DNA of 64,000 nt from positions 310,001-374,000 of the forward strand of contig NW_026855417.1 in NCBI RefSeq assembly GCF_026571515.1, written 5' to 3'. The DNA comes from Ruditapes philippinarum. Taxonomy: Eukaryota. Both the position numbers and the translations under genes were made by a program. The notes under the pieces are model-generated. The model saw only the letters and a program-made list of their open reading frames with translations. It did not search any database and was not told where the DNA came from. Below, in pieces: positions 5,211 through 64,000 of this stretch. Positions within the stretch are counted from its first letter, which is position 1. Every line of letters starts with the position of its first letter.

Positions 5211-6240
5211 CATATAACGTACATAAATATATGATCATATACCGTACATGAATACATGATCATATAACGTACATAAATACATGATCATATACCGTACATT
5301 AATACATGATCATATACCGTACATTAATACATGATCATATAACGTACATTAATACATGATCATATACCGTACATTAAAACATGATCATATAACGTACATT
5401 AATACATGATCATATAACGTACATTAATACATGATCATATAGCGTACATTTAAACATGATCATATACCGTACATTAATACATGATAATATACTGTACATT
5501 AATACATGCTAATATATCGTACATTAATACATGATCATATACCGTACATAAATACATGATCATATAACGTACCTTTATACATGATCATATAACGTACATT
5601 AATACATGATCATATACCATACATTAATACATGATCATATACCATACATTAATACATGATCATATAATGTACATAAATACATGATCATATACCGTACATT
5701 AATACATGATCATATACCGTACATAAATACATGATCATATAACGTACATTTATACATGATCATACAGCGTACATTAATACATGATCATATACCGTACATG
5801 AATACATGATCATATAACGTACATTTATACATGATCATATAACGTACATACATACATGATCATATACCGTACATTAATACATGATCATATACCGTACATG
5901 AATACATGATCATATAACGTACATTTATACATGATCATATAACGTACATTAATACATGATCATATACCGTACATTAATACATGATCATATACCGTACATG
6001 AATACATGATCATATAACGTACATTTATACATGATCATATAACGTACATTAATACATGATCATATACCATACATTAATACATGATCGTATAACGTACATT
6101 AATACATGATCATATAACGTACATACATACATGATCATATACCGTACATTAATACATGATCATCGTAAATTAATACATGATCATATAACGTACATAAATA
6201 CATGATCATATAACGTACATTAATACATGATCATATACCG
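5211..6240. repeat. 25-bp minisatellite, about 41 copies
   Basis: Consensus CATGATCATATACCGTACATTAATA, with period 25 read directly. Confidence 0.95.
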
Positions 6241-9099: not shown

Positions 9100-12058
9100 G
9101 CTGGTAGTTAGAATGATAGTAAGAGTGATAGAGTGATACTTAGAGTGATAGAGTGAAAGTTAGAGTGATAGTTAGAGTGACAGAGTGGTAGTTAGAGTGG
9201 TAATTAGATAGAAAGAGTGAAAGTTAGAGTGATAGAGTGAAAGTTAGAGTGGTAGTTAGAGTGATAGTTAGAGTGATAGAGTGAAAGTTAGAGTGGTAGT
9301 TAGAGTGGTTGTTAGAGTGGTAGTAAGAGTGATAGAGTGAAAAGTTAGAGTGATAGTTAGAGTGAAAGTAAGAGTTAGAGTGGTAGTCAGAGTGAAAGTT
9401 AAAGTGTACTGGACTTGTAAGTGAGAGTGGCACTAAACTTGTAAGTGAGAGTGGTACTGGACATGTTAGTGAGATTGGTACTGGACTTGTTAGTGAGAGT
9501 GGTACTGGACTTGTTAGTGAGAGTGGTACTGGACTTGTAAGTGAGAGTGGTACTGGACTTACTAGTGAGAGTGGTACTGGTCTTGTTAGTGAGAGTGGTA
9601 CTGGACTTATTAGTGAGAGTGGTACTGGTCTTGTGAGAGTGGTACTGGTCTTGTTAGTGAGAGTGGTAAAGGACTTATTAGTGTAATTGGCACTGGACTT
9701 GTGAGAGTGGTACTGGTCTTGTTAGTGAGAGTGGTACTGGCATTTTTAGTGAGAGTGGTACTGAACTTGTTAGTGAGAGTTGTACTGAACTTGTTAGTGA
9801 GAGTGGTACTTGACTTATCAGTGAGAGTGGTACGGCACTTGAACGTGAGAGTGGTACTGAAATTGTTATAGAGAGTGGTACTGGACTTGTTAGTGAGAGA
9901 GGTACAGGGCTTGTCAGTAAGTGTGTTACAGGACATGTTAGTGAAAGTTGTACTGGAATTGTTAGTGAGAGTTGTACTGGACTTGTTAGTAAGAATGATA
10001 CTGGACTTATTAGTGAGAGTGGTACTGCACTTGTAAGTGAGAGTGGTACTGAAATTGTTATTGAGAATGGTACTGGACTTATTAGTGAGAGTGGTACTGG
10101 ACTTGTTAGTGAAAGTGGTTCTGGACTTATAAGTGAGAGTGGTACTGGAATTGTTAGTGAGAGTTGTACTGGAATTGTTAGTGAGAGTGGTACTGCACTT
10201 GTAAGTTAGAGTGGTTCTGGACTTATTAGTGAGAATGGTACAGGACTTGTTAGTGAGAGCAGTACTGGACTTTTTAGTGAGAGAGGTACAGGACTTGTTC
10301 GTAAGAATGGTTCAGCACTTGTTAGTGAGAGTTGTACTGGACTTGTTAGTGAGAGCTGTATGGAACATGCAAGTTAGAGTGGTACTGGACTTATAAGTGA
10401 GAGTGGTTCTGGACTTATTAATAACAGTGGTTCTGGACTTTTTAGTTTGAGTAGAACTGAACTTGTTAGTGAGAATGGTACTGGATGTGTTAGTGAAATT
10501 GGTACTGGACTTATAAGTGAGAGTGGTACTGGACCTATTAGTGAGAATGGTACTGAACTTGCTAGTGAGTGTGGTACTGGACTTATTAGTGAGAGTGGTC
10601 CTGGACTTGTGAGATTGGTACTTGACTTATTAGTGACAGTGGTACTGGACTTGTTAGTAAGATTTGTATAAGACTTGTGAGTGAGAGTGGTACTGGACTT
10701 ATTAGTGAGAGTGGTACTGGACTTGTTAGTGAGAGTGGTACTGGACTTGTTAGTGAGAGTGGTACTGGACTTGTTAGTGAGAGTGGTACTGGACTTGTTA
10801 GTGAGAGTGGTACTGGACTTGTTAGTGAGAGTGGTACTGGACTTGTTAGTGAGAGTGGTACTGGACTTGTTAGTGAGAGTGGTACTGGACTTGTTAGTGA
10901 GAGTTGTACTGGACTTGTTAGTGAGAGTGGTACTGGACTTGTTAGTGAGAGTTGTACTGGACTTGTTAGTGAGAATGGTACTGGATTTATTAGTGAGATT
11001 GGTATTGGACTTGTTTATGAGAGAGGTACTGGACTTGGTAGTGAGATTGGTACTGGATTTGTTAGTAAGACTGGTACTGGACTTATAAGTGAGAGTGATA
11101 CTGGACTTGTTATTGAGAGTGGTACTGAACTTGTTAGTGAGGGTGGTACTGGACTTGTTAGTGAGAGTGGTACTGGACTTATTAGTGAGAGTGATATTGG
11201 ACTTGTTACTGAGAATGGTACTGAACTTGTTAGTGAGAGTTGGACAGGACTTGTTAGTGAGAGTGGTACTGGACTTGTTAGTGAGAGTGGTACTGGACTT
11301 GTTAGTAAGAGGGGTACAGGACTTGTTAGTAAGAGTTGTACTGGACTTGTTAGTGAGAGAGGTACATGACTTGTTAGTATGAGTGGTACTGGCCTTGTTA
11401 GTGAGAGTTGTACTGGACTTGTTAGTAACAATGATACTTGACTTATTAGTGAGAGTGGTTCTGAAATTGTTATTGAGAGTTGTACTGGACTTGTTAGTTA
11501 GAAAGGTACAGGACTTGTTAGTAACAGTGGTACAGGACTTGTTAGTGAGAGCTGTACTGGACTTGTTAGTGAGAGTGGTACAGGTTTTGTAAGTAAAAGT
11601 GGTACAGGACCTGTAAGTAAAAGTGGTACAGGACCTGTAAGTAAAAGTGGTACAGGACCTGTAAGTAAAAGTGGTACAGGACCTGTAAGTAAAAGTGGTA
11701 CAGGACCTGTAAGTAAAAGTGGTACAGGACCTGTAAGTGAAAGTGGTACAGGACCTGTAAGTAAAAGTGGTACAGGACCTGTAAGTAAAAGTGGTACAGG
11801 ACCTGTAAGTAAAAGTGGTACAGGACCTGTAAGTAAAAGTGGTACAGGACCTGTAAGTGAAAGTGGTACAGGACCTGTAAGTGAAAGTGGTACAGGACCT
11901 GTAAGTGAAAGTGGTACAGGACCTGTAAGTAAAAGTGGTACAGGACCTGTAAGTAAAAGTGGTACAGGACCTGTAAGTAAAAGTGGTACAGGACCTGTAA
12001 GTGAGAGTTGTACTGGAATTGTTAGTGAAAGTTGTACTGGACTTGTTAGTGAGAGTGT
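9100..12058. repeat. Compound satellite: 8/12-bp zone, then 24-bp GTTAGTGAGAGTGGTACTGGACTT, then 24-bp variant GTAAGTAAAAGTGGTACAGGACCT
   Basis: Periods read directly. Zones at about 9100-9400, 9400-11585 and 11585-12000. Confidence 0.95.
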
Positions 12059-13644: not shown

Positions 13645-14135
13645 GTGCAGTAAGAAACTAAGAAACTGCAGTCAATAAACAAAGCGATCTGCAGCAAGAA
13701 ACAAAGAAACAAGCTGCAGCAAGAAACTGCAGTCAGTAAACAATGAAATCTGCAGCAAGAAACAAAGAAACAAGCTGCAGCAAGAAACTGCAGTCAGTAA
13801 ACAATAAAATCTGCAGCAAGAAACAAAGAAACAAGCTGCAGCAAGAAACTGCAGTCAGTAAACAATAAAATCTGCAGCAAGAAACAAAGAAACAAGCTGC
13901 AGCAAGAAACTGCAGTCAGTAAACAATGAAATCTGCAACAAGAAACAAAGAAACTGCAGCAAGAAAATGCAACCAGATAACAAAGAAACTGCAGCAAGAA
14001 ATAAAGAAACTACTTTCAATAAACAAAGAAAGTGCAGCACATAACAAAGAAACTGTATCAAGAAACTGCAGCACCTAAACAAAGCTACTGTAGCCAACTA
14101 ACAAAGAATCATCAGCCAATAAACAAAGAAACAGC
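13645..14135. repeat. 61-bp higher-order tandem repeat built from CTGCAG-containing subunits, with degenerate edges
   Basis: AGTCAGTAAA recurs at 13731, 13792, 13853 and 13914. Confidence 0.9.
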
Positions 14136-14295
14136 AGAAAAAAGTAACAGCAATAATTACAATATCTTATCCAAAAAATCATGCATGAAACATAGTATTC
14201 ATTTCATTTAATTAATATACTTAGATTAGCATTTAACCAAATAAGTTATGTTTAACACCAGAACAAATAAAAGCCTATGATTTTAAGATTATTTC

Positions 14296-14532
14296 ATAGT
14301 TTAACACATTGATTGTTTCATATTTTAACACATTGATTGTTTCATATTTTAACACATTCAATGATTGTTTCATATTTTAACACATTGATTGTTTCATAGT
14401 TTAACACACTGTTTTTTTCCATAGTTAAACACATTGATTGTTTCATAGTTTAACACATTGATTGTTTCATAGTTTAACACATTGATTGTTTCATATTTTA
14501 ACACATTGATTGTTTCATAGTTTTAACACATT
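14296..14532. repeat. 24-25-bp tandem repeat in the 3' UTR of MFSD13A copy A
   Basis: Unit TTAACACATTGATTGTTTCATA(TTT/GT), about 9 copies, ending about 13 nt from the stop codon. Confidence 0.9.
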
Positions 14533-27129: not shown

Positions 27130-28178
27130 CTGAAAAGATTCATAAGAATGTTGTAAAACACATGCATCGTGCATTTAATCCTGTCAAAGACAAAAAGATG
27201 TACATGGTAAATGTTGAAACAATTAAACATTATACACGGGTAAATAGTGATCAGCACACAGGTTTTTAAATGCAATTAATTTCCTTTCATGAAAGCTGCA
27301 AGAGAGTTGAAGAAAAAGGGGATAATTAAATATGACGTTATCACATTTACATATGGTCTTATGGAGGTCCTTCTTGTATCCTGCATTTACCCAGTTTGTG
27401 CTTGGCTTTGAAGTCATTTCGATATTGTAATGGACATATCGAGACATTTTAGCTTTAGTGGTGGAAGAAGACTCAGATGCCTCTTCGTGCAATATTTTGG
27501 GCGCCAGCGGACATCTGATTAGAACAACTGACTTTCCGTAATATTGATGTAGAAAGAAACCAGTTACTGGCAGGATTCGATTTTATTTCTTGAATCATCG
27601 TTAAAAATTAATGAATAAAGCCTCAAAACATATTTTTTAACATAGATTAGCAGGGGCAATAGAAAAAGAAAAACGTACAGAAGATAAGTTAGAATTACAA
27701 AACAAATCCCCGAAAATTGTATTTTTATGCTTTTCTTATTCCGTTTTGAGTGCAACACTTTACAATTTGACCCATTTTTCAGTTAAAATAATTATTCTGG
27801 AAAAAAAAAAACAGACTGAGCGAATAAGCTTAATTTTGTACAAAAGTTGTTGGTATAGATCTTAATCAAATGAAACATTAATCTCGAAAAAATATTTTCA
27901 GTCCCGTCATCTCAAAAAAACTTCAGTGGAGTCCATTTAACAATAATACATGTTCTAAAAAGTAGAAATGATGTTCAAACAACATTTAGTTAACTTCGAA
28001 ATATGGTCACAATCAACGCTTTATGAAAGCCAAACTTTGAAAGCCAAATATATATTCAACGGTATTTCAACTTTAAATTAAGTCTCTGTGATAATCAAAT
28101 GTTACAACATCAATCTGTCTACAGGATACACGATTGCAGGCAATGCTGTTGTCTTATACATCATGACTCACATTATAA

Positions 28179-30239
28179 AGAAGTAAAATAAAGAAAACAC
28201 CCTTTATATAGAAGTAAAATAAAGAAAACACCCTTTATATAGAAGTAAAATAAAGAATACACCCTTTATATAGAAGTTAAATAAAGACAACACCCTTTAT
28301 ATAGAAGTAAAATAAAGAAAACACCCTTTATATAGAAGTAAAATAAAGAAAACACCCTATATATAGAAGTAACATAAAGAAAACACCCTTTACATAGAAG
28401 TAAAATAAAGAAAACACCGTTTATTTAGAAGTAAAATAAAGAATACACCCTTTATATAAAAGTAAAATAAAGACAACACCCTTTATATAGAAGTAAATAA
28501 AGAAAACACCCTTTATTTAGAAGTAACATAAAGAAAGCACCCTTTATTTAGAAGTAAAATAAAGAAAACACCCTTTATATAAAAGTAACCTAAAGAAAGC
28601 ACCCTTTATTTAGAAGTAAAATAAAGAAAACACCCTTTATATAGAAGTAACATAAAGAAAGCACCCTTAATTTAGAAGTAAAATAAAGAAAACATCCTTT
28701 ATATAGACGTAAAATAAAGAAAACACCCTTTATATAGAAGTAAAATAAAGAAAACACCCTTTATATAGAAGTAAAATAAAGAAAACACCCTTTATATAGA
28801 AGTAACATAAAGAAAACACCCTTTATATAGAAGTAAAATAAAGAAAACACCCTTTATATAGACGTAAAATAAAGAAAACACCCTTTATATATAAAAGTAA
28901 CATAAAGAAAACACCCTTTATATAGAAGTAACATAAAGAAAACACCCTTTATATAGAAGTAAAATAAAGAAAACACCCTTTATATAGACGTAAAATAAAG
29001 AAAACACCCTTTATATAGAAGCAACATAAAGACAACACCCTTTATATAGAAGTAACATAAAGAAAACACCCTTTATATAGAAGTAACATAAAGAAAACAC
29101 CCTTTATATAGAAGTAAAATAAAGAAAACACCCTTTATATAGAAGTTAAAAAAGAAAACACCCTTTATATAGACGTAAAATAAAGAAAGCGCCCTTTATA
29201 TTGAAGTAAAATAAAGAAAACACCCTTTATATAGACGTAAAATAAAGAAAGCGCCCTTTATATAGAAGTAAAATAAAGAAAACACCCTTTATATAGAAGT
29301 TAAAAAAGAAAACACCCTTTATATAGACGTAAAATAAAGAAAACACCCTTTATATAGAAGCAAAATAAAGAAAACATCCTTTATTTAGAAGTAAAATAAA
29401 GAAAACACCCTTTATATAGAAGTAACATAAAGAAAACACACTTTATATAGAAGTAACATAAAGAAAACACCCTTTATATAGAAGTAACATAAAGAAAACA
29501 CCCTTTATATAGAAGTAAAATAAAGAAAACACCCTTTATATAGAAGTAAAATAAAGAAAACACCCTTTATATAGAAGTAAAAAAAGAAAACACCCTTTAT
29601 ATAGACGTAAAATAAAGAAAACACCCTTTATATAGAAGTAAAATAAAGAAAACACCCTTTATATAGAAGTAAAATAAAGAAAACACCCTTTATATAGAAG
29701 TAAAATAAAGAAAACACCCTTTATATAGACGTAAAATAAAGAAAACACCCTTTATATAGAAGTAAAATAAAGAAAACATCCTTTATATAGAAGTAAAATA
29801 AAGAAAACACCCTTTATATTATTAGTTATAAAGATCGTTGACTGGTTATATGGCCCTATATAAACGGCTATTTGTAAATATAACCCACCGTTAGGGAGGG
29901 TTTTATTGGGGAAAAAGCCGTTTATTAAAGGAATATAACCTTCAAAATCTTTTTAACGAAAATTATAATACAGCAAGACATTTTAGAGAAAAAAATAAAA
30001 TTTCTTCATGAATCGACAGCAGCCGTGTATATAAAACTATATAAACGTCACGATTATCCAATGAAAAATGACGTTACAAACGTGCAGTATTATAAGAAGT
30101 AAAATAAAGAAAACACCCTTTATATAGACGTAAAATAAAGAAAACACCCTTTATATAGAAGTAAAATAAAGGAAACACCCTTTATATAGAAGTAAAATAA
30201 AGAAAACACCCTTTATATAGAAGTAAAATAAAGAAAACA
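28179..30239. repeat. 31-bp satellite (about 53 + 5 copies) in intron 3 of copy B, split by a 275-bp insertion at 29820-30094
   Basis: Unit AGAAGTAAAATAAAGAAAACACCCTTTATAT. The array ends 9 nt from the exon-3 boundary. Confidence 0.95.
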
Positions 30240-42888: not shown

Positions 42889-44383
42889 AACAAGAGGGTC
42901 ATGATGGCCCTTAGTCGCTCACCGGAAACAACTGCTTTTCAGAGTTGCAAATTATCCATTGTCAATATTTTCTGATATTTAATATGAGCATAGAATATGT
43001 TTAAACAATAATTTGAAGAAATGCCATGACCTGAGGCATTTAAGCTTTAGCTTAAACAGTGCCAATCAAATTAATATGAGCAACTTGATAAAAGACTACC
43101 TAATAATGCTACAAAGTTTGGTGATCACCTATCAATTATTTCAATAGGAAATGGTCAAAGGTTTTTCTATTTTTAGCCCTAGAGACCCCTAAAAGGGCCT
43201 AATCAAATTAATATGAGCAAACTTGATAAAAGCGTACCTAAGAATGCTACAGACAAAGTTTGGTGATCATCCATCAATTAGTTCTGTAGAAATTGACGTT
43301 AAAAGGTATTTCTATGTTTAGCTTTAGCGGCCCCTAAAAGGGGCCAATCAAATTAATATGATCAAAATTGATAAAAGACTACCCAAGAATGCTACAAAAT
43401 TTGGTGATCATTATAGAAGAAGATGTTTAAAGATTTTTCTATTTTGAGCTCTAGAGACCCCTAAAAGGGGCCAATCAAATTTAAATGATCAATCTTGATA
43501 AAAGACTACCCAAAAATGCTACAGACATCCATCAATTAGTTCTGTAGAAATAGACGTTTAAAGGTATTTCTATTTTTAGCTTTAGCTGCCCCTAAAAGGG
43601 GCCAATCACATTAATATGAGCAAACTTGATAAAAGACTATACAAGAATGCTACAGACCAAGTTTGATGATCATCCATCAATTAGTTCTGTAGAAGAAAAC
43701 ATTAAAAGGTTTTTCTATTTTAAGCCCTGGAGACCCCTAAAAGGGGCCAATCAAATTAATATGAGCAAATTTGATAAAAGACTACCCAAGAGTGCAACAG
43801 ACAAGATTTGGTGATCATCCATCAATTAGTTCTCTAGATATAGATGTTCAAAGGTATTTCTATTTTTAGCTTTAGCGGCCCCTAAAAGGGGTTAATCAAA
43901 TTAATATGAGCAAATTTGATAAAAGACTACCCAAGAATGCTACAGACAAAGTTTGGTGATCATCTATCCATTAGTTCTGTAGAAGAAGATGTCTAAAGGT
44001 TTTTCTATTTTTAGCCCTAGAGACCCCAAAAAGGGGCCAATCAAATTAAAATAAGCAAATTTGATAAAAGACTACCAATTAAAATTAAAGAATGCTACAA
44101 GCAAAGTTTGGTGATTATCCATCAATTAGTTCTGTAGTAGAAGATGTTTAAAGGTTTTTCTATTTTTAGCCCTAGAGACCCCTAAAAGGGGCCAATTGAA
44201 ATGACATGAGCAAATTCAAGTGTGACTGTCACAAGGATGCTACAGACCAAATTTAAAGTAAATCTGCCCAGCGGTTTCAGAGAAGAAGACTATTGTTGAC
44301 GCATGACGACGGACGACGGACGCCGAAGTATCCCCCTTTGATACTAATAGCTCACCCTGAGCCTTCGGCTCTGGTGAGCTAAA
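42889..44383 (+). mobile_element. HINE/pearl-type (Helentron-associated) element with an internal array of about 145-bp units (about 8-9 units)
   Basis: AACAAGAG...GCTCACC left module, repeated CCCTAAAAGGGGCCAATCAAATT units, GACGACGGACG microsatellite, and a terminal hairpin AGCTCACC...GGTGAGCT-AAAAA. Confidence 0.8.
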
Positions 44384-51437: not shown

Positions 51438-54400
51438 CATCTACATCTACATGTTACTCCCGAACAATCAATTCTGACTATGACTGGGAGGCGCTTGTCA
51501 GGAAAACTGTGTTAAAAGAATTAGTGCATACTAAAAGATAAAGATCACAGATAAAAAAGGTGCAGGATAAAAAGAATAGTGCAAGATTAAAAATATACTG
51601 GGGAGGGGACTAGAAGGTGACTGTCGCCAGCCTATCCTTGAAGGTATCTAGGCTGGGACTGGATTTGACCTGATATGGAAGGCTATTCAATACCTGAGAG
51701 TTCTAGGGAAGTAGGAATTTAGATGATATTGGGTACGGGACTGTGGGATCAGGAAGTTCAGATTTCTAGTTGGGGTCAGATGGTTATGGTCAACATATAC
51801 AAGTTTGTATTGGATTTTATAGAACACTACTAGAGAGGACTGGAGTCTGCGGCTTTCTAGGGAAGGCCACCCAAGTTCATTTAGCATTTGGGTTACACTA
51901 CTGTCGAAATTATAATTATTACAGACATATCTGGCCGCAGCTTGTTGGACACTTTCAATCTTATGACTTAGATGTTTCTGCCAGGGGTGCCATATGGTGG
52001 AACAATATTCTAGTTGTGGTCGGACATAAGTAACATAGGCTGATGTTTTGAGTTGCCTGTTTTGGGTTTTGACGTTTCTCTGGATGAATCTTAGAGAATT
52101 TTTGGCCTTGGAGGTGATGTTATTTATGTGCTGTGTCCAGTTTAGATCTTAAGAGATAGTTACTCCAAGGTATTTTGCAGATTCTGCTGATTTGAGAGTT
52201 TTATTATTTAAGGGTGTATGGCAAGATGGTGGGGTTCTTTTTACGGGTGATCCTCAGCAGCTCACACTTGTCTGGGTTGAACTCCATAGCCCAGTCCGGG
52301 TACCACTAAAATACGCAACGGAGATTTTTTGGCGCAACGGACGCAACGGGCGCAACGGAGATATTTTTTTTAGAAAAACCGGCACAACGCCTTTTTTTAA
52401 GTCAATGTGCTATATTTAAGCATCTAAAATGATTAATTAGCATTATTAAGTAAGTATGTTTTAAAATGTTTCATAAATTGAACACGTTTAATTGCACTGA
52501 AGAGTTATATGCCTGGCGAAATGGAAATTTCATGGCGCAACGGAGATATTTAAAAAAACAACAACGACACAACGCCTTTTTTAAAAGTCAATGTGCTATA
52601 TTTAAGCATCTAAAATGATTGTTTAGCATTATTAAGTAAGTTTGTTTTAAAATGTTTCATAAATTGTATATGTTTAATTGCACTGAAGGGTCATATGCCT
52701 GGCGAAATGGAAATTTCATGGCGCAACGGAGATATTTTTTTAAAAAAAAAACGACACAACACCTTTTTTTAAGTCAATATGCTATATTTGAGCATCTAAA
52801 ATGATTGTTTAGCACTATTAAGTAAGTATGGTTTAAAATGTTTCATAAATTGTATATGTTTACACTGAAGGATTATATATGCCTGGCGAAATGGAATTTC
52901 ACGGCGCAACGGAGATAATTTTGGAAAATCGGCACAACGTATGTACTAATATATGAAATTAATTAACACCAATGTTATTTAATAAATTAATTTTAAAAAA
53001 GACATAGAAACCTTAATCGTATATCAAATATAGCTGCAATGTTGATGTTGTAAAGGATTGTGTGCCGGCGAAATGGACATTTTGTATTCGCAACGGAGAT
53101 TTTTTTTCGGCGCAACGGAATTTAAAGAGAAAACAATGTTTTTATCGTAATGGCTGACACTGGAAGACAAGTATGGATTTTACAATCTGTTTCATTTTTT
53201 CCCCGTTTAATTCGTTATTTTTACGAAAAGTACTGTAATAGCTTAATTTTCTATACATAATTTTCAGAATTTTACTTAAAGAATACGAAAAGTCCGTAAT
53301 GCATACGCTGTGGACTTTCTAATGTAATCTTAACAATAAATTACCACAACCAATTTCAACAAAACGCTGCTTAATGGCTTTATTGCTACACAAATAAATA
53401 CGTTTATTTCCGTCATGGCTGATATTCGAAGATAAACATGAGTCTTTAAATCTATTTCTTTTTTTCCCGTGTATTACGTTATATTTACGTTAAATATTGT
53501 AATGACTTTAATCAATGACATGATTGTAAAACAAAGTCATATCTTTATTCAAAAGATTTGTATTACAAATAGTTAAAACGACATGCATGTAGAATTTGCT
53601 GATCTTTCTATATCCATTTTAAAACAGTAAAACACATAAAATAATTAAATTGAACATTACTTATAACAATTCCTTCCCCAATCAGAAAACCCCGTTAAAA
53701 TCAAATGCAGCTACTGTTTATTTAGCGAAACAACAGCAATTTGGTGATTGGCAGAATGTTTATCACGGGTGTTAAGTACCGATAATTAAATTACCAATGA
53801 CACGTGGTTGATGTTTATTGGACACGTAAGCGTTTTCACACCATTTAGATAATGTGATAAAGAGAAACATGTATTGACTCTAAGATATTAAATTTTTTTT
53901 TTATAACTTGTTATTGTCGAAAATATTGCTTTTTGAAGCTTGTTATGCCAATATTTCACTCAAACTATGAGAAAAAATGGTGTATATGAAATGTGAGACG
54001 TAATAAAACATTTTGGAGTCTGAATCGCCACTGATGACGGTCAAGTTTTCTATTACAAGTGTTAAAAACATTAAAACACCCGTGCCATACACATGCACGA
54101 TACGTTGCTAATTGCTAACAATTCTCTCGTAATTGACTACCTTTTGTTAATATCATAATTATGAAATATTTGGATTGCTCTTGATGAAATATACGAATAC
54201 GCAACGAACTGTTATTGAAAAAGTACACAATGATTAATGAAAGATAATAAATTGATAAAATAATATAATATGATAAAACTGTTATGATAATCCCCGTTGC
54301 GTCGAAATGTGTCCATTTCGCCGTAATTTTAAATATCTTTTACAATATCCTATTTTCAACATTTTCTAAAAAATAAAGGAAAGTAAATCAGTTTTAAAAG

Positions 54401-58257: not shown

Positions 58258-61200
58258 GTAAGCCTTTATCAGTTTATTCGAGGTGTTATTAACTGGTTAT
58301 AATTTATTTAATATTTCAAAATGATGTTTACAAACAGTTAACTAGGTAAACAGGACCTTCAGAGAACTAAGAAATTGGTATATTGTTTGGCTTCCAGAGT
58401 GACTGCTTTAAGGCTTAATTAATTATTATTTATAGAATTAAACACTGTTAAATACTGTATTTTTTCATTTAAGTGGCAGAATATGTCTTGGCATCTTTTA
58501 TGTGATCTGGTCCCACATTAGTCCTATAAATATGACGTCGCTTTGAGATATTTTTGCTTCTGGGCAGCTTGACCGACAAAAACTATAACAAGCCTGTAAC
58601 GTCTAATATATTGGACTAGTCCCACATGTGATCACTGAGCTTAATCTACTACGGTTATACAGTTGAGTTCAAAGTAAATTTTCCATCCTTGTGCACACCA
58701 TGTGCAATTGTAATTGTTAGGTATGTTTTATTCATAATTCCATTTTTGATAAATTGATAAAGTTTATTTTATTACAGGTATTAAAATGCATGATATTATT
58801 TGGACTTTTGTGAGCTATCAAAAGCTAGCTAGTGCCTGTAGTTGATTGTTTTATATCATGCATTCATGTTTGACTGAATATAGTGATATAGATATGTACA
58901 TTTGACTGTGTCATCCAGTTGGCCTGCATTAGGTTGCATGAATCACACACCTCTATGTCACCTTTTTATGCTCCCACTCCAGGGAGGAGGGGGGAAGGGG
59001 GTATTTAAGTTTGCCCTTGTCCATCCATCAGAGTGCGTGTGTGCTGTGTCACATATGTAGCTCTAACAGTGCTTGAGCTAGTGTAAACAAACTTTACAGG
59101 TATGTTGATCAGCATGTGAAGTTGTGCACCTGGGATTTTGCTTGTAAAATGTATATTTATTCAGTTTTGATAGTTATTGCTCATGACTAAGTAAATATAT
59201 TTTGCAATTTTCAAATTGTGTCACATGCAGCTCAAAACATATTTGACTTGGAGTCATGAAACTTTACAGAAATGTTGGTCAGCAGGTGTAGTTGTGCATT
59301 GTATTTTGCTTGTTTTTAATTTCTTTTAAACATACATCTAAAATTGAAATTTGAAATTCTTGCAGCTCAATATTGGGAGAAATCAAGATAATCAACATTG
59401 TAAAAATAGGAGGTTATTTTATGCAGGAAGGGGGACATGTAGAATTTCCTTTGTTTGTCTGTCTGTCTGTTTGTCTGTCTGTCATACTGTCATGTTGTAT
59501 GTCAATAGACTAACAATTTTAAGCAGTAGAATGTGGGGACATCAGTGTCCTATGGACACATATCCAGTTCTACAGTGTTTATGTTTCAATTATTTGTTTT
59601 ATAATTTTGATGCCACTAAATTGATGATGTTAATTAGCGTCCACGCCGAAGGGCGACACCCTTATCAAATGAAATCAGATTTTGTGAAAGGGCAATTGCA
59701 ACTTCTAGAGCCTTTTTGTCGGCCATAAAAGCCGAACATTCGTATTGATATGAGTGTTTGATTATCGAAAATGAAATGTTGCAATATGTAAAATGAGTTG
59801 TCATGGGTTTATTGATAGGCATGTAAACACACTGAAGGGTCAGACTAGGTCATTAAAATAGTAGATTGACCTCCCAAATAAATAAATTAATAGACTTTGT
59901 TCATTTTGACTATTATGTTGCATGTTCCAAAGAAAATACCACATGAACTTGAAATTCTATCAAACAACCAATATAAATGATACTATTCAAAAATACCCTA
60001 TATTATAGTATAAATAAACTTATACCATATAGGGGGTATATATTTTGGATATTATAGAACTGTGTATTTTGGATATTATCATTAACATTGATAGAATTAA
60101 AGTTCTTACGGAAAAAAATTAAATATTTAAATGTCTAGTAATACAATACTTGTTATGTTGGACAATAGCTTATATAGCTAATGTTTATATGTTTTTATGA
60201 AACCGACTATAAATAAAGATTATCTTATCTTATCTTTGTTAAATTAAAACAATTAACCATTGAAAAGTTTATAATCAGATGTCTACTAGTTCATCTTCAC
60301 TTGCTGCATTTCTTTTTTTGCTTTGCATCAATGCTTTTCTTGTACATAATTTATATAATATCTTACTTACTTGGTGTAAGATGAGTTTTAATGATAATTA
60401 CAAGTAGAAGTGAGGAGGATACAACCAATCATCAAGCATGAAACACATTTTAAGATAATTGACTTTAACTCACATATCATATGTTCAGATGATGTTCATA
60501 TCATATAACATTATACGTCTAGTATATGTGTATTTGCCTTATAGTATTGCAAACTGTTTGCTTTCTAAATGAATATATTGTGACTTAGAAAACTTTTCTG
60601 CAAAATGAAAGATTTGTCAAGCTCGTAATGTTGAACATGAACTATGAAGTTAAAGGGACTCCACTGGGTTTTTTTGACATGCTTGGACGGGAAATTATTT
60701 TACGAGATTACTGCTTCAGTTGATATAAACTAATAATTATATGCACGATAACAGATAACAGGTTTCACTCAAATTTGGATAAGGATAGCAAAAATTTACG
60801 ATCAGAGTACATTCTTAATTATCAGTATCTTTTAGCAAATCATTCATTTTAAATGCCCCATCAGTTCTGTTCTATTTAAGGAATTTAAATTTAATGCTTT
60901 TAGGTTTTTGGACCTCAGACGCAGCAGTCAGAGTTGAGCTCCTTAAATAGTTTAATACATTTGTAAACTTTTGGACTGACTCTACAAAGTTTTGATTACT
61001 TGCATTGTGAAGTTATTTAAACACTTCATCTTTATATAAACAGTTAAATGATCCCAATCATAGTTTATTTAAACAGGAAGGTCAGTTACTGGTGAGACTG
61101 TAGTATAATTCATTGTAGAGACTAAGACTGGTAGAGTACATACCATCAACATTGTCAAAAGTTATATCAATAAACACCATATAACAATTAGAGGAAGCCA

Positions 61201-61896
61201 GGGTCATTTCTGTGTTATCCTTTCATTAGCCAAGGATTATGTCCAGTTATAATTTTTGATTGGTTAGGCATCATTGTTGTCATCATTATTGTTGTCATAC
61301 AAAAACTTAATATAGCCCATACACGAAAAAATTCTAACAGTATCACATTTACATTGCTCGTTAATCTTGACAAGGGGCACTAATTTGAAAAAGGGGCATT
61401 TCTCTGAAAGCTATATATGTGGAGTAATAATGCCTCCTAAGTTTGAATTTAAGAGTTTTTGTTTTAATTGTTTATTAAGTTGAATAATTTCAAAACAATG
61501 TGAATCTTGGAAGACTTGAAGACAATGACAAGGCATAGTTGTAAAGCAAGGGACTTTATCCTGAAAGCAATATATTAAAGCTATTTTTTAACTTAGAAAT
61601 TTGTAAAAAATTCTTATTATTAATAGAATAATTTAAACATGTCAAAGATATCAACTTGAAACTTTTAATACTTGATTTATTATCTGGGCATGACGAGGTA
61701 CAGTTGTAAGATCCCGAAAGTAATACTTTTAGAAGTTATGCCCCTTTTAAAATTTATGATACCGTATTTATAAAAATCAGTTATTGATAGTGGTTACCCT
61801 TTACAGACAAGCATTAACACTGTATGTAGTTCTCTAGTATATAACATTTTAGGATTAGTGTTTAAATGATCAGTATTTCACTTTTATCTTTTTCAG

Positions 61897-62041
61897 AACT
61901 CCATTCTCAAATAAAGTGACACCTGACATACAATCAGGTCAACAACGTTTGACGATGCAGTCAACATGGTTTGGTCAGTTCAAGGCTATGATGTACAAAG
62001 TTCTTCTCTTAAAAAGAAGAAATAAGAAAACAACAATATAT
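61897..62041 (+). CDS. ABCA5-like transporter, coding exon 2
   Basis: TTTTTCAG acceptor. Reads TPFSNKVTPDIQSGQQRLTMQSTWFGQFKAMMYKVLLLKRRNKKTTIY, matching the ABCA N-terminal Q-x-K-x(5)-L-x-K-x-R pattern. TAT|GTAAGT donor, phase 0. Confidence 0.85.
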
Positions 62042-62832
62042 GTAAGTTGTCTAAGAAAATGACAATATAGATGTAGGTTGGATAACAAAACAACAATATA
62101 TGTATGTTTGTGTAAGAAAACAACAATATACATGTACAAATATAAGATGTATAAGAAAACAACAATATATGTAAGTTGTGTAAGAAAACAACAATATATG
62201 TAATTTGTGTAAGAAAACAACAATATATGTAAGCTGTGTAAGAAAACAACAATATATGAGAGTTGTATGATAAAACAACAATATATGTAAGTTGTGTAAG
62301 AAAACAAGAATAAATTTTTGTTGTGTAAGAAAACAACAATATATGTAAGTTGCATAATAAAACAACAATAAATGTAAGTTGTGTAAAAAAACAACAATAT
62401 ATGTAAGTTTGGTAAGAAAACAACAATATATGTAAGTTGTTTAAGAAAACAACAATATATGTAAGTTGCAATTAATAAAACAACAATATATGTAAGTTGC
62501 ATAAGAAAACAACAATATATGTAAGTTGTGTAAGAAAATAATAATATATGTAAGTTGTGTAAGAAAACAACAATATATGTAAGTTGTTTAAGAAAACAAC
62601 AATATATGTAAGTTGTGTAAGAAAACAACAATATATGTAAGTTGTCTTAGAAAACAACAATATAGATGTAAGTTGGATAAGAAAACAACAATATATGTAA
62701 GTTGTGTAAGAAAATAACAATATATGTAAGTTGCATAATAAAACAACAATATAATGATGTAAGTTGTGTAAGAAAACAACATTATATGTAATAATGAAAG
62801 GCATATAAGAAAACAACAATAAAATGTAAGTT
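62022..62832 (+). repeat. 29-bp tandem array made from the exon-2/intron-2 junction of the ABCA gene (about 27-28 units)
   Basis: Unit TAAGAAAACAACAATATAT|GTAAGTTGTG. The first unit is the coding end of the exon plus the real donor. Confidence 0.95.
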
Positions 62833-63179
62833 AATATTTGTATTAAGATGTAAAATGTTACTTGTATAAGAAGCAAATGTATATAATATAATTCATGTAA
62901 AATAACAATGTTTGAAAACATCAATATAATAACACTAATTTGATACGCATACATTATGTCAGTTTAATATGTATCCAACAATAGATGTTCATGTATGTAA
63001 AACATTTAATGGAAATGAACAATTAATCATTATATAAGTTATTTGAAAACAACAACAGCAATATGTATGCTTTAAAGTATAAAGAAATTTCAGTATATCA
63101 GTTATAAAAAGTTAGGTACATCCTATTAGTGACTATACATATAATGTCCTTGTAATAAGATATTTACATTTCTCTACAG

Positions 63180-63955
63180 GAGTTCTTCTTACCGGTTTAC
63201 TTTATCGTGATACTGGCAATCATTCGATTAACTTCACAAAATGACCCGCTTGATCAGTTTGGCAACTTTCCAAATTATTCACTATATGATAGTAGATTCA
63301 CCTGGACAATGGCTAACAAAAACCTTATAGTATCACCAGATACTGCAGAAGTTCAGCAGTTGATGGCGAACGTGAAACAGTTGATTCTAGACAAGACAAA
63401 TCAGACGATAGTTATTCAGTATTTCGCTAATGCAACTGAGGTGGAGGCTGAATACGTTCGTAACAAGACAAATATCCTAGCTGGTATTGTCATCAATTAT
63501 AATAATGGTTCAAATTTGACCTATGCTCTAAGATTTCCCGATGGTAAATTACCAAATACAGACATTGGTAAAACGTATACTGGACAAGGAGGTTGTCGTC
63601 GTAGAGATGGAAAAAACGGACAGACTAATGATGGGGGTCTTCAAAATGACTATAGTTGTCAAGTCAATAGCTACCTGTTTGCAGCATTTTCAATATTACA
63701 GTCGGCAATTGATACAGCACTGATACAAAAAGAAACCGGAGTTATGACATTTTCTTTACCAGATATACTGGTAGAAATGTTACCGAAATCAGCTTTCCTG
63801 CAAGACACAAGCTACATACAGATTGTATCATCAATATATTTCGTGATCGCGTATTCGCCGTTAATAACAATGTTAACTGTAGCATTGGTGGCAGAGAAGG
63901 AAAAGAAGATAAAAGAAGGCATGAGAATGATGGGACTTAGATCTTCTGCATTCTG
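63180..63955 (+). CDS. ABCA5: ABC transporter subfamily A (ABCA5-like), coding exon 3 (TM1, extracellular domain, TM2); gene continues beyond the window
   Basis: TCTCTACAG acceptor. Reads EFFLPVYFIVILAIIR...LQSAIDTALI...VAEKEKKIKEGMRMMGLRSSAFW, with the ABCA EKE..K(E)...MGL hallmark. TG|GTAAC donor. Exact ABCA orthology uncertain. Confidence 0.85.
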
Positions 63956-64000
63956 GTAACATTTTCCTCATTTAATAGTACGGTATTATGGGACTTTCCC

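What the first reader, a model, noticed from the sequence alone, without database searches (positions are those of the whole stretch)
62022..62832. Tandem array of splice donors: the exon-intron junction itself has been amplified about 27 times
Seen: the 29-bp unit equals the last 19 exonic nt (encoding KKTTIY) plus the first 10 intronic nt, giving about 18 further perfect TAT/GAT/AAT|GTAAGT donors downstream. The three copies nearest the true donor are weakened (GTAGGT, GTATGT, GTACAA). Unit 2 alone carries a CA-to-TG change creating an in-frame TGA at 62060-62062, so extending the exon to any later donor gives a premature stop. Each unit also has AG-[AAAACAACAATATAT]-GT, an in-frame 15-nt KTTIY cassette with a weak acceptor. 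Inference: a U1-site or decoy-donor array that could tune productive splicing through NMD by copy number, or seed new micro-exons. Simple edge decay is the null explanation.
Basis: partly seen in the sequence, partly recalled or inferred. Interest (0 to 1): 0.78.

Follow-up and report, generated by a model that had tools for sequence, protein, structure and literature searches.

The report
Splice-donor minisatellite in clam ABCA gene
The first intron of an ABC-transporter gene begins with 27 tandem copies of its own exon-intron junction, a real but already described kind of repeat, and nothing shows that the extra splice sites are used.

Summary
A 29-bp minisatellite of 27 units (62022-62840) starts 20 nt inside the first coding exon of an ABCA-type gene. 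It repeats the donor, giving the true donor plus 18 further NNT|GTAAGT sites. The unit occurs nowhere else in the 1.4-Gb genome.

A paralogue and 12 of 12 homologues inspected keep the same exon end and intron position, and the paralogue has no array. So the junction seeded the array, not the reverse. Assembled RNA-like contigs join 62041 to 63180, and no alternative junction appeared, though power was low.

This is a known kind of repeat: a boundary-spanning minisatellite, as in human F7 IVS7, IFI6, CBS and ABCA7 intron 18, and the amphioxus "mirages". This scan has already noted it at least 12 times elsewhere in this genome.

The same gene holds eight more junction arrays. In both other exon-spanning donor arrays the nearest decoys are intact, so the weakened units 2-4 here look like ordinary edge decay. 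The TGA matters for only 2 of 22 candidate donors. The decoy/NMD-tuning and micro-exon ideas have no support.

It is a new member of a known kind, of low to moderate interest. The excess of arrays at junctions (8-9 of 16 against about 3 expected) is the part worth following.

The parts
61897..62041 (+). First coding exon of the ABCA-type gene. ATG at 61955; 29 codons ending ...NKKTTIY.
   Evidence: Translation. The acceptor cag ends at 61896. X1 contig record 2 covers 61895-62042 at depth 56. This DNA is unique in the genome (0 of 39 outside matches reach it).
62042..62047 (+). Authentic 5' splice site, TAT|GTAAGT.
   Evidence: The X1 contig leaves the genome exactly here. Contigs that start at 63180 carry the exon-1 end in front of them.
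62022..62840 (+). 29-bp minisatellite of 27 units. Unit 1 spans the exon 1 / intron 1 boundary. The array fills 799 of the 1138 intron bases.
   Evidence: All 15 genome matches to the unit lie in this array.
62051..62150 (+). Units 2-4: the diverged proximal edge, with donors GTAGGT, GTATGT and GTACAA and with indels.
   Evidence: 7, 3 and 12 differences from unit 1.
62060..62062 (+). In-frame TGA in unit 2, the first stop met if the exon reads on.
   Evidence: The next in-frame stop is the TAA at 62201.
62151..62767 (+). Homogenised core, units 5-25. Units 5, 17 and 23 are identical to unit 1. Units 21-23 are the closest relatives of units 1-3.
   Evidence: distance matrix and block comparison.
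62768..62840 (+). Units 26-27: the diverged distal edge.
   Evidence: 12 and 9 differences from unit 1.
62841..63179 (+). Non-repetitive remainder of intron 1, with a pyrimidine-rich acceptor.
   Evidence: Single copy in the genome. Sequence.
63180..63956 (+). Exon 2, 259 codons, start of the first membrane domain (ABC2_membrane_3).
   Evidence: Translation. Pfam PF12698, E 1.4e-11. RNA-like contigs at depth 42-91.

Best explanation
This is a boundary-spanning minisatellite of the kind called a "mirage", as also seen in human F7 IVS7.

Origin (inferred): a tandem duplication of about 29 bp straddling the exon 1 / intron 1 junction of an ABCA-type transporter gene was expanded by slippage or unequal exchange to 27 units. 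All extra copies lie on the intron side.

Maintenance (inferred): unit 1 is held constant by selection on the coding sequence and the donor. The inner units are kept alike by concerted evolution. The edge units (2-4 and 26-27) escape homogenisation and decay.

Splicing: the most upstream site, which is the authentic one, is used. This is shown by contigs only. It is what the 5'-to-3' selection of the first functional donor, demonstrated experimentally for F7 IVS7, would predict.

Consequence (inferred): the 18 identical downstream donors are silent or rare. Their use would give frameshifted or stop-containing mRNA. The array is a tolerated by-product of a repeat-rich genome, not a regulatory device.
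For: - The anatomy is confirmed.
- All 15 genome matches to the unit lie in this array, and the reversed control pattern gives 0. The distal intron is single copy.
- Direction of descent: the only paralogue found (2 matches, self plus one at 42% identity) has the same phase-0 intron before the conserved E. Its exon 1 ends ...KKRNKKQTIQ|GTATTG. Its 682-nt intron 1 has no tandem repeat.
- All 12 homologues inspected (of 150 listed, 234 hits) are collinear through this segment, for example ...KRRNMNTTFW then EFF.
- RNA: X1 record 2 runs 61895-62042 at depth 56 and then carries 16 letters that do not fit the intron. Two contigs starting at 63180 carry 13 letters of the exon-1 end in front. Intron bins have depth 0 to 3 against 31 to 91 in exons.
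- Concerted evolution with decayed edges: units 1, 5, 17 and 23 are identical. Unit 2's nearest relative is unit 22 (4 differences). Block 1-3 is nearest to block 21-23.
- It is part of a wider pattern. Eight further arrays in the same gene touch a splice junction, and this scan holds at least 12 earlier notes of the same kind in this genome.
- Precedents, read in sections or passages: PMC1557585 (abstract, Introduction, Discussion), PMC5954066 (passages) and PMC3087553 (passages).
Against: - RNA evidence is thin. The junction rests on contigs of one run whose RNA label is a guess. The 16 letters beyond 62042 were not displayed, and contigs drop rare variants.
- The two raw RNA runs gave depth of about 4 or less (X21) and 0 (X23) over the exons, so no junction count was possible. 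No NMD-blocked data exist.
- X1 does hold low-depth pieces of the array (62164-62222 at 6.8; 62762-62835 at 4.5). These could be precursor RNA, retained intron or DNA carry-over.
- Under uniform placement, all three nearest decoys being among the 8 weakened of 26 has P = 0.02, so weak selection against proximal decoys is not excluded.
- The TGA is the only in-frame stop for the first perfect decoy (62171, +129 nt, in frame).
- Copy-number variation was not measured.
Confidence: 0.8

Rival explanations
1. One reading: the array is a decoy-donor or U1-site device. Some transcripts splice from downstream donors, meet a stop and are degraded by NMD, so copy number sets the output of productive mRNA. 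Selection has weakened the three nearest decoys and installed the TGA.
For: - There are 18 decoys identical to the true site.
- The three nearest are weakened, P = 0.02 under uniform placement.
- The TGA is the only stop protecting against in-frame use of 62102 and 62171.
- In human IFI6 and CBS the two nearest pseudo-sites are used (PMC1557585, Introduction).
- In human ABCA7 one-unit retention occurs at about 2%, and VNTR length correlates with expression and exon skipping (PMC5954066, passages).
Against: - No alternative junction was seen (low power).
- In both comparable exon-spanning donor arrays of the same gene the nearest decoys are intact: the first six donor contexts of the 49-bp array are identical, and both extra copies of the 63-bp array are identical to the true site.
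- Units 2-4 differ from the consensus along their whole length and by indels.
- 20 of 22 candidate donors give a frameshift or another stop without the TGA.
- Acceptor-type arrays are as common in the gene as donor-type arrays, which fits a general mutational process.
Confidence: 0.1
2. The array acts as a cluster of U1 snRNP binding sites without splicing. It might suppress premature cleavage and polyadenylation in an AT-rich first intron, or boost promoter-proximal transcription.
For: There are 19 consensus GTAAGT sites within 800 nt, close to the start of the gene. The functional idea rests on general knowledge of U1 roles, recalled and not tested here.
Against: - No test was possible.
- The same gene carries acceptor-type arrays and donor arrays with non-consensus sites (GTAATT, GTTTGT) at internal exons, so no special role for U1 sites is needed.
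- The paralogue does without an array.
Confidence: 0.04
3. The array came first, as an intronic or transposon-borne satellite, and the exon later extended into it by adopting a donor from a unit.
For: Unit 1 is identical to the array consensus and to units 5, 17 and 23. A dispersed repeat lies just upstream at 61600-61841.
Against: - The exon end and the intron position are shared with the paralogue and with 12 of 12 homologues inspected.
- The unit is found nowhere else in the genome.
- The dispersed repeat ends before the exon.
Confidence: 0.02
4. Assembly artefact: the repeat is a mis-assembly of the reference.
For: Tandem repeats are prone to collapse or expansion in assemblies.
Against: Other runs hold array pieces with unit-specific variants: X15 at 62678-62835, and X1 at 62164-62222 and 62762-62835. 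X15 has depth in all 30 of 30 bins. Copy number itself is not confirmed.
Confidence: 0.02

Closest known systems
Human F7 intron 7 37-bp VNTR (Borensztajn et al. 2006, PMC1557585; abstract, Introduction and Discussion read)
   Same: The first monomer spans the exon-intron boundary. The authentic donor is followed by pseudo-donors of identical sequence. Only the most upstream site is used.
   Different: F7 has 5-9 units with 4 exonic nt per unit and a weak site (gugggu). Here there are 27 units with 20 exonic nt and a consensus GTAAGT. Silence of the decoys was shown experimentally for F7, but only by contigs here.
Human IFI6 (6-16) intron 2, CBS intron 13, LMNB2 and PDGF boundary minisatellites (as listed in the Introduction of PMC1557585; original papers not seen)
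   Same: A donor reiterated 10-25 times in the intron. IFI6 has 25 pseudo-sites, a number like this array.
   Different: In IFI6 and CBS the two nearest pseudo-sites are used constitutively. Here the three nearest are degenerate and no use was seen.
Human ABCA7 intron 18 25-bp VNTR (De Roeck et al. 2018, PMC5954066; passages read)
   Same: An ABCA-family gene with a VNTR that begins at the donor of the preceding exon. Use of the next unit's donor gives a frameshift and a premature stop.
   Different: The ABCA7 unit starts at the GT and holds no exon sequence. It lies at an internal exon. Its length effect is mainly on skipping of the next exon. The position is not homologous, so this is parallel origin.
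Amphioxus "mirages" (Adh3 and globin genes; Ebner et al. 2010, PMC3087553, passages read; the original Adh3 paper not seen)
   Same: [quoted passage not shown] Regular splicing is undisturbed. There is concerted evolution inside the array, with the array boundaries excluded from it.
   Different: A different phylum. The globin units are 150-160 bp with few copies. Here the units are short, the copies many, and nine arrays sit at junctions of one gene.

Membership tests
Boundary-spanning minisatellite ("mirage" / F7 IVS7 type) | Head-to-tail array of a unit of roughly 10-160 bp | tested here: met
   29 bp, 27 units. 20 matches against 0 in shuffles.
Boundary-spanning minisatellite ("mirage" / F7 IVS7 type) | The terminal unit spans an authentic exon-intron boundary, so the splice site is reiterated in the intron | tested here: met
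   Unit 1 is 62022-62050 and the donor cut is at 62041|62042. The junction 62041^63180 is supported by contigs.
Boundary-spanning minisatellite ("mirage" / F7 IVS7 type) | The exonic part is genuine, older coding sequence (array derived from the gene) | tested here: met
   The paralogue and 12 of 12 inspected homologues keep the segment and the intron position, and the paralogue has no array.
Boundary-spanning minisatellite ("mirage" / F7 IVS7 type) | Normal mRNA is made from the authentic site | tested here: met
   X1 contigs only. Raw reads were too shallow to exclude minor isoforms.
Boundary-spanning minisatellite ("mirage" / F7 IVS7 type) | Concerted evolution inside the array, with diverged edges | tested here: met
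   Units 1, 5, 17 and 23 are identical. Units 2-4 and 26-27 are the most diverged.
Boundary-spanning minisatellite ("mirage" / F7 IVS7 type) | Length polymorphism between individuals | tested here: inconclusive
   X15 shows a 4-nt deletion at 62752 and C>A at 62366. Copy number cannot be read from short contigs.
   No such junction in 4 of 24 offered runs. Exon depth in raw reads was about 4 or less, and no NMD-blocked data exist.
   In both other exon-spanning donor arrays in the same gene the nearest decoys are intact.
   This needs genotyped individuals with matched RNA.
Dispersed or transposon-borne satellite | Unit or flanks repeated elsewhere in the genome | tested here: not met
   All 15 unit matches lie in this array. 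The distal intron is single copy. The dispersed repeat at 61600-61841 stops before the exon.
Recursive-splice / micro-exon cassette | A competent 3' splice site (pyrimidine tract plus AG) directly before a 5' splice site or short exon | tested here: not met
   Read directly. The 18 nt before the unit's AG hold 8 pyrimidines, with the longest run 2. The true acceptors at 63179 and 61896 hold 13 and 15 of 18. No RNA support.
ABCA subfamily transporter gene (host gene) | Two membrane domains and two ABC domains in ABCA order | tested here: met
   Exon 2 hits PF12698. The locus matches a 1696-aa homologue collinearly over residues 27-1630. That homologue has 2x ABC_tran, 2x ABC2_membrane_3 and R1_ABCA1. 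One source names a 98%-identical fragment ABCA protein 5.

The most novel reading that the evidence does not exclude
In this bivalve-like genome, minisatellites may be born or retained preferentially at splice junctions. In this one ABCA gene, 8 of 16 arrays span a junction and a ninth starts at the donor GT, against about 3 expected from simple geometry. Possible causes are a selection-anchored master unit that keeps re-seeding the array, or instability coupled to transcription or splicing. Such arrays would then be a standing source of new splice sites and shifted intron positions. They would also be natural experiments in splice-site choice, since here 18 consensus donors are apparently ignored in favour of the first.
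Probability: 0.3. Interest if true: 0.6.

Novelty: new member of a known kind. Interest (0 to 1): 0.3.

Why it matters
On its own the array is one more example of a repeat type known since the F7, IFI6 and amphioxus Adh3 work. It is worth noting in annotation, because gene predictors and read aligners can pick the wrong one of 19 identical donors.

Its value is as a natural test of donor choice. There are 18 decoys with the same consensus hexamer and the same 20 upstream bases as the true site, at 29-bp spacing, and the first site appears to win.

The wider point is the density of such arrays. One gene has nine arrays at splice junctions, and this scan holds at least a dozen further notes of the same kind in the genome. 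If the excess over geometric expectation holds genome-wide, it bears on how minisatellites arise and on intron and splice-site evolution in molluscs. My two searches found no report of this for bivalves in the held library.

Tried and rejected
A 76%-identical exon-2 fragment (P0152) exists on a 4.9-kb contig that I could not read.
- Spliced isoforms at protein level: the search for homologous proteins with exon 2 (17 hits; 6 fetched) returned only single-exon reading frames from genomic contigs. It gave no evidence for or against inserts between exon 1 and exon 2.
- Position-wise variability: the donor hexamer varies slightly more than the A-rich core (13 changes over 6 columns against 18 over 17). 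This gives no sign of either conservation or purging of donors.
- An idea from memory, that the first intron of vertebrate ABCA genes lies a few codons upstream, was not testable here and was dropped. The paralogue shows that the position is old within this lineage.
- Transposon origin, reverse direction of descent and assembly artefact were all rejected (see the rival explanations).
- The geometric null is crude. It assumes 60 junctions and 12-22 kb of collapsed intron. Exons between 391363 and 395511 (contig coordinates) were not mapped. Long-period arrays inflate the expectation.
- Supplements of the papers were not opened. Figure S2 and Table S3 of PMC5954066 and the additional files of PMC3087553 may hold unit-level detail that I did not see.

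Full report
**What is there.** The window is G000:C3904:310001-374000 of a 1.41-Gb assembly.

- Tandem Repeats Finder reports one array at 62022-62791, with period 29, 25.8 copies and 79% matches.
- Anchoring on the A-rich core, I parse 27 units over 62022-62840.
- The exon upstream has its acceptor at 61896|61897 and an ATG at 61955. It codes 29 residues ending NKKTTIY at 62041.
- The next exon starts at 63180 and runs to 63956. It matches Pfam ABC2_membrane_3.
- Unit 1 (62022-62050) therefore holds the last 20 exonic bases and the first 9 intronic bases.
- 19 of the 27 units carry NNT|GTAAGT, meaning the true donor and 18 more. Units 2, 3, 4, 6, 7, 8, 10 and 26 do not.
- Reading on from the exon meets a TGA at 62060-62062.

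The array fills 799 of the 1138 intron bases.

**Not chance, not a dispersed element, not an artefact.**

- A 21-nt core matches 20 times in the window with up to 2 mismatches, against none in 100 shuffles.
- In the whole genome, all 15 matches to a 24-nt part of the unit (up to 1 mismatch) lie in this array. The reversed control gives none. That tool warns that repeat counts are lower bounds.
- The rest of the intron (62841-63179) is single copy.
- A dispersed repeat with at least 39 other copies covers 61600 to about 61841 and stops before the exon.
- Independent runs hold array pieces with unit-specific variants: X15 at 62678-62835, and X1 at 62164-62222 and 62762-62835.

**Which came first.**

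- The genome has one paralogue of exon 2, at 42% identity over all 259 residues (2 matches, self and this one).
- The paralogue's exon 2 begins at the same conserved E after a cag acceptor. Its exon 1 ends ...KKRNKKQTIQ before GTATTG.
- The paralogue's 682-nt intron 1 has no tandem repeat.
- A search of 1.84 billion representatives gave 234 hits. I fetched 12 of the 150 listed. All 12 are collinear through this segment, with a basic stretch, about five residues and then E. The closest, at 48% identity, reads ...KRRNMNTTFW then EFF.
- Exon-2 reading frames from other genomic contigs, at 65-76% identity, also begin at an acceptor just before the E (6 of 17 fetched).

So the exon end and the intron position are old and the array is younger. 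The junction was copied into the intron.

**RNA.** I laid 4 of 24 offered runs on 58501-64000.

- X1 is kept as contigs and its RNA label is a guess. It has depth 31-91 over the two exons and 0 to 3 in the intron bins that contain no exon sequence, which fits RNA.
- X1 record 2 (164 letters, depth 56) lies on 61895-62042 and then carries 16 letters that do not fit the intron.
- Two X1 contigs that begin at 63180 carry 13 letters of the exon-1 end in front.
- Together these support the junction 62041^63180. The 16 letters were not shown, and no joint row was listed because the sides are short.
- X1 also holds two low-depth array pieces (depth 6.8 and 4.5). In these the decoy donors of units 5 and 6 are uncut. 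They may be precursor RNA, retained intron or DNA carry-over.
- X15 has depth in all 30 bins and looks like DNA. It shows a 4-nt deletion at 62752 and C>A at 62366.
- The raw RNA runs gave depth of about 4 or less (X21) and 0 (X23) over the exons, so rare junctions could not be counted.
- Contigs drop rare variants. This shows that the canonical junction exists, not that others are absent.

**Internal structure**.

- Units 1, 5, 17 and 23 are identical.
- Unit 2's nearest relative is unit 22, at 4 differences. They share a CT start, a 2-nt insertion and a TTGG end.
- The block of units 1-3 is closest to units 21-23.
- Relative to those partners, units 2 and 3 carry three derived changes each, against one and none in units 22 and 23.
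- Units 2-4 and 26-27 are the most diverged. They differ along their whole length and by indels, not just at the donor.
- This is the pattern of concerted evolution with edges left out, as described for amphioxus mirages (PMC3087553, passages).

- Under uniform placement, the chance that the three nearest decoys all fall among the 8 weakened of 26 is 0.02. Edge decay predicts exactly this.
- The same gene provides controls. In a 49-bp array of about 63 units that starts in the exon ending ...LALGIDQ|GTAAT, the first six donor contexts are identical, and 39 of 54 anchored units are identical. In a 63-bp array of 2.9 units, both extra donors equal the true one.
- Neither comparable array shows proximal weakening.
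- I tallied 22 candidate downstream donors. Without the TGA, only 62102 (GTATGT, +60 nt) and 62171 (GTAAGT, +129 nt) would give in-frame insertions free of stops. The other 20 give a frameshift or meet the TAA at 62201.
- The TGA therefore does shield against the first perfect decoy. It is still one of several changes in a decaying unit.
- The 15-nt cassette has a poor acceptor. There are 8 pyrimidines in the 18 nt before its AG, with the longest run 2. The true acceptors have 13 and 15 of 18 (read).

**Known relatives.**

- Borensztajn et al. 2006 (PMC1557585; abstract, Introduction and Discussion read) describe the F7 intron 7 VNTR, whose first 37-bp unit spans the boundary. The pseudo-sites are identical and functional but silent, and the most upstream site is chosen by a 5'-to-3' process.
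- The Introduction of that paper lists IFI6 (25 pseudo-sites, the two nearest used), CBS, LMNB2 and PDGF.
- De Roeck et al. 2018 (PMC5954066; passages read) describe a 25-bp VNTR in human ABCA7 that begins at the exon 18 donor. One-unit retention occurs at about 2%, and there are length effects on expression and on exon 19 skipping.
- Ebner et al. 2010 (PMC3087553; passages read) use the name "mirages" for such repeats in amphioxus.
- I found the F7 and ABCA7 papers by search. The word "mirage" came from earlier notes of this scan, and I checked it in print.
- Two searches found no report for bivalves in the held library.

**The same gene, further on.** I mapped the gene with two stored homologues (P0009 and P0003) against 44 kb of the contig. 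The match is collinear over P0009 residues 27-1630 up to contig position 403977.

- TRF gives 16 non-overlapping arrays of score 100 or more between 371955 and 404000. A further 5 lie beyond 404000.
- Eight of the 16 span a junction:
  - donor type: this array; 375239-378357 (49 bp x 63); 399502-399684 (63 bp x 2.9);
  - acceptor type: 385298-385618; 388944-389635; 396747-397487; 400278-400364; 402495-403180.
- A ninth (386926-387170) starts at the donor GT. Two more end 9-25 nt from an acceptor or are too decayed to call.
- A crude seeding null gives 2.4-3.7 expected. It assumes 60 junctions, 12-22 kb of collapsed intron and a unit placed at random.
- Under that null, the tail probability is 0.0005-0.011 for 8 arrays and 0.00006-0.002 for 9.
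- I take this as a real but roughly measured excess. A selection-anchored unit that outlives purely intronic arrays could explain it without any special mechanism.

**Verdict.** The structural reading, that the junction was amplified, is supported. The functional reading is not.

Noticed in passing
L016:1239-4357 (contig C3904:375239-378357): A 49-bp array of about 63 units whose first unit is the end of the ABCA exon coding ...RWLLCLLSPVALALGIDQ plus GTAAT. That gives about 60 reiterated CAG|GTAAT donors in a 3.1-kb array. I read it as donor type.
   Followed up: partly
L017-L019 (contig C3904:385298-403180): Seven further arrays sit at splice junctions of the same gene. Five are acceptor type (45 bp x 7, ~66 bp x 10, 41 bp x 18, 33 bp x 2.8, 78 bp x 9). 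One is donor type (63 bp x 2.9). One starts at a donor GT.
   Followed up: partly
window 5211-6237, 9406-12057, 13660-14137, 14287-14532, 28173-30239, 43061-44216, 52349-52922: There are many other large minisatellites in the window, for example 25 bp x 41, 24 bp x 111 and 31 bp x 53. I did not check whether any touches an exon boundary.
   Followed up: no
window 61600-61841: A dispersed repeat with at least 39 other copies at 67-89% identity lies just upstream of the exon-1 acceptor.
   Followed up: partly
window 58501-60340: Several stretches have very high depth in both RNA and DNA runs (up to 152,725 summed word depth), with many odd joints and loose ends at 59134, 60274 and 60314. They are probably transcribed transposon copies.
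   Followed up: no
window 62022-62840: 14 of the 27 units begin with a second donor-like motif, GTAAGA, 9 nt after the GTAAGT. Each regular unit therefore carries two donor-like sites.
   Followed up: no
P0001: A 3240-aa representative matches the exon-2 query in 39 separate stretches at 30% identity. It may be a mis-predicted protein read through a tandem repeat of this kind.
   Followed up: no
L019 (contig C3904:405665-407145): A 43-bp x 34 array lies just beyond the last mapped ABCA exon. Its relation to the gene's 3' end is unknown.
   Followed up: no
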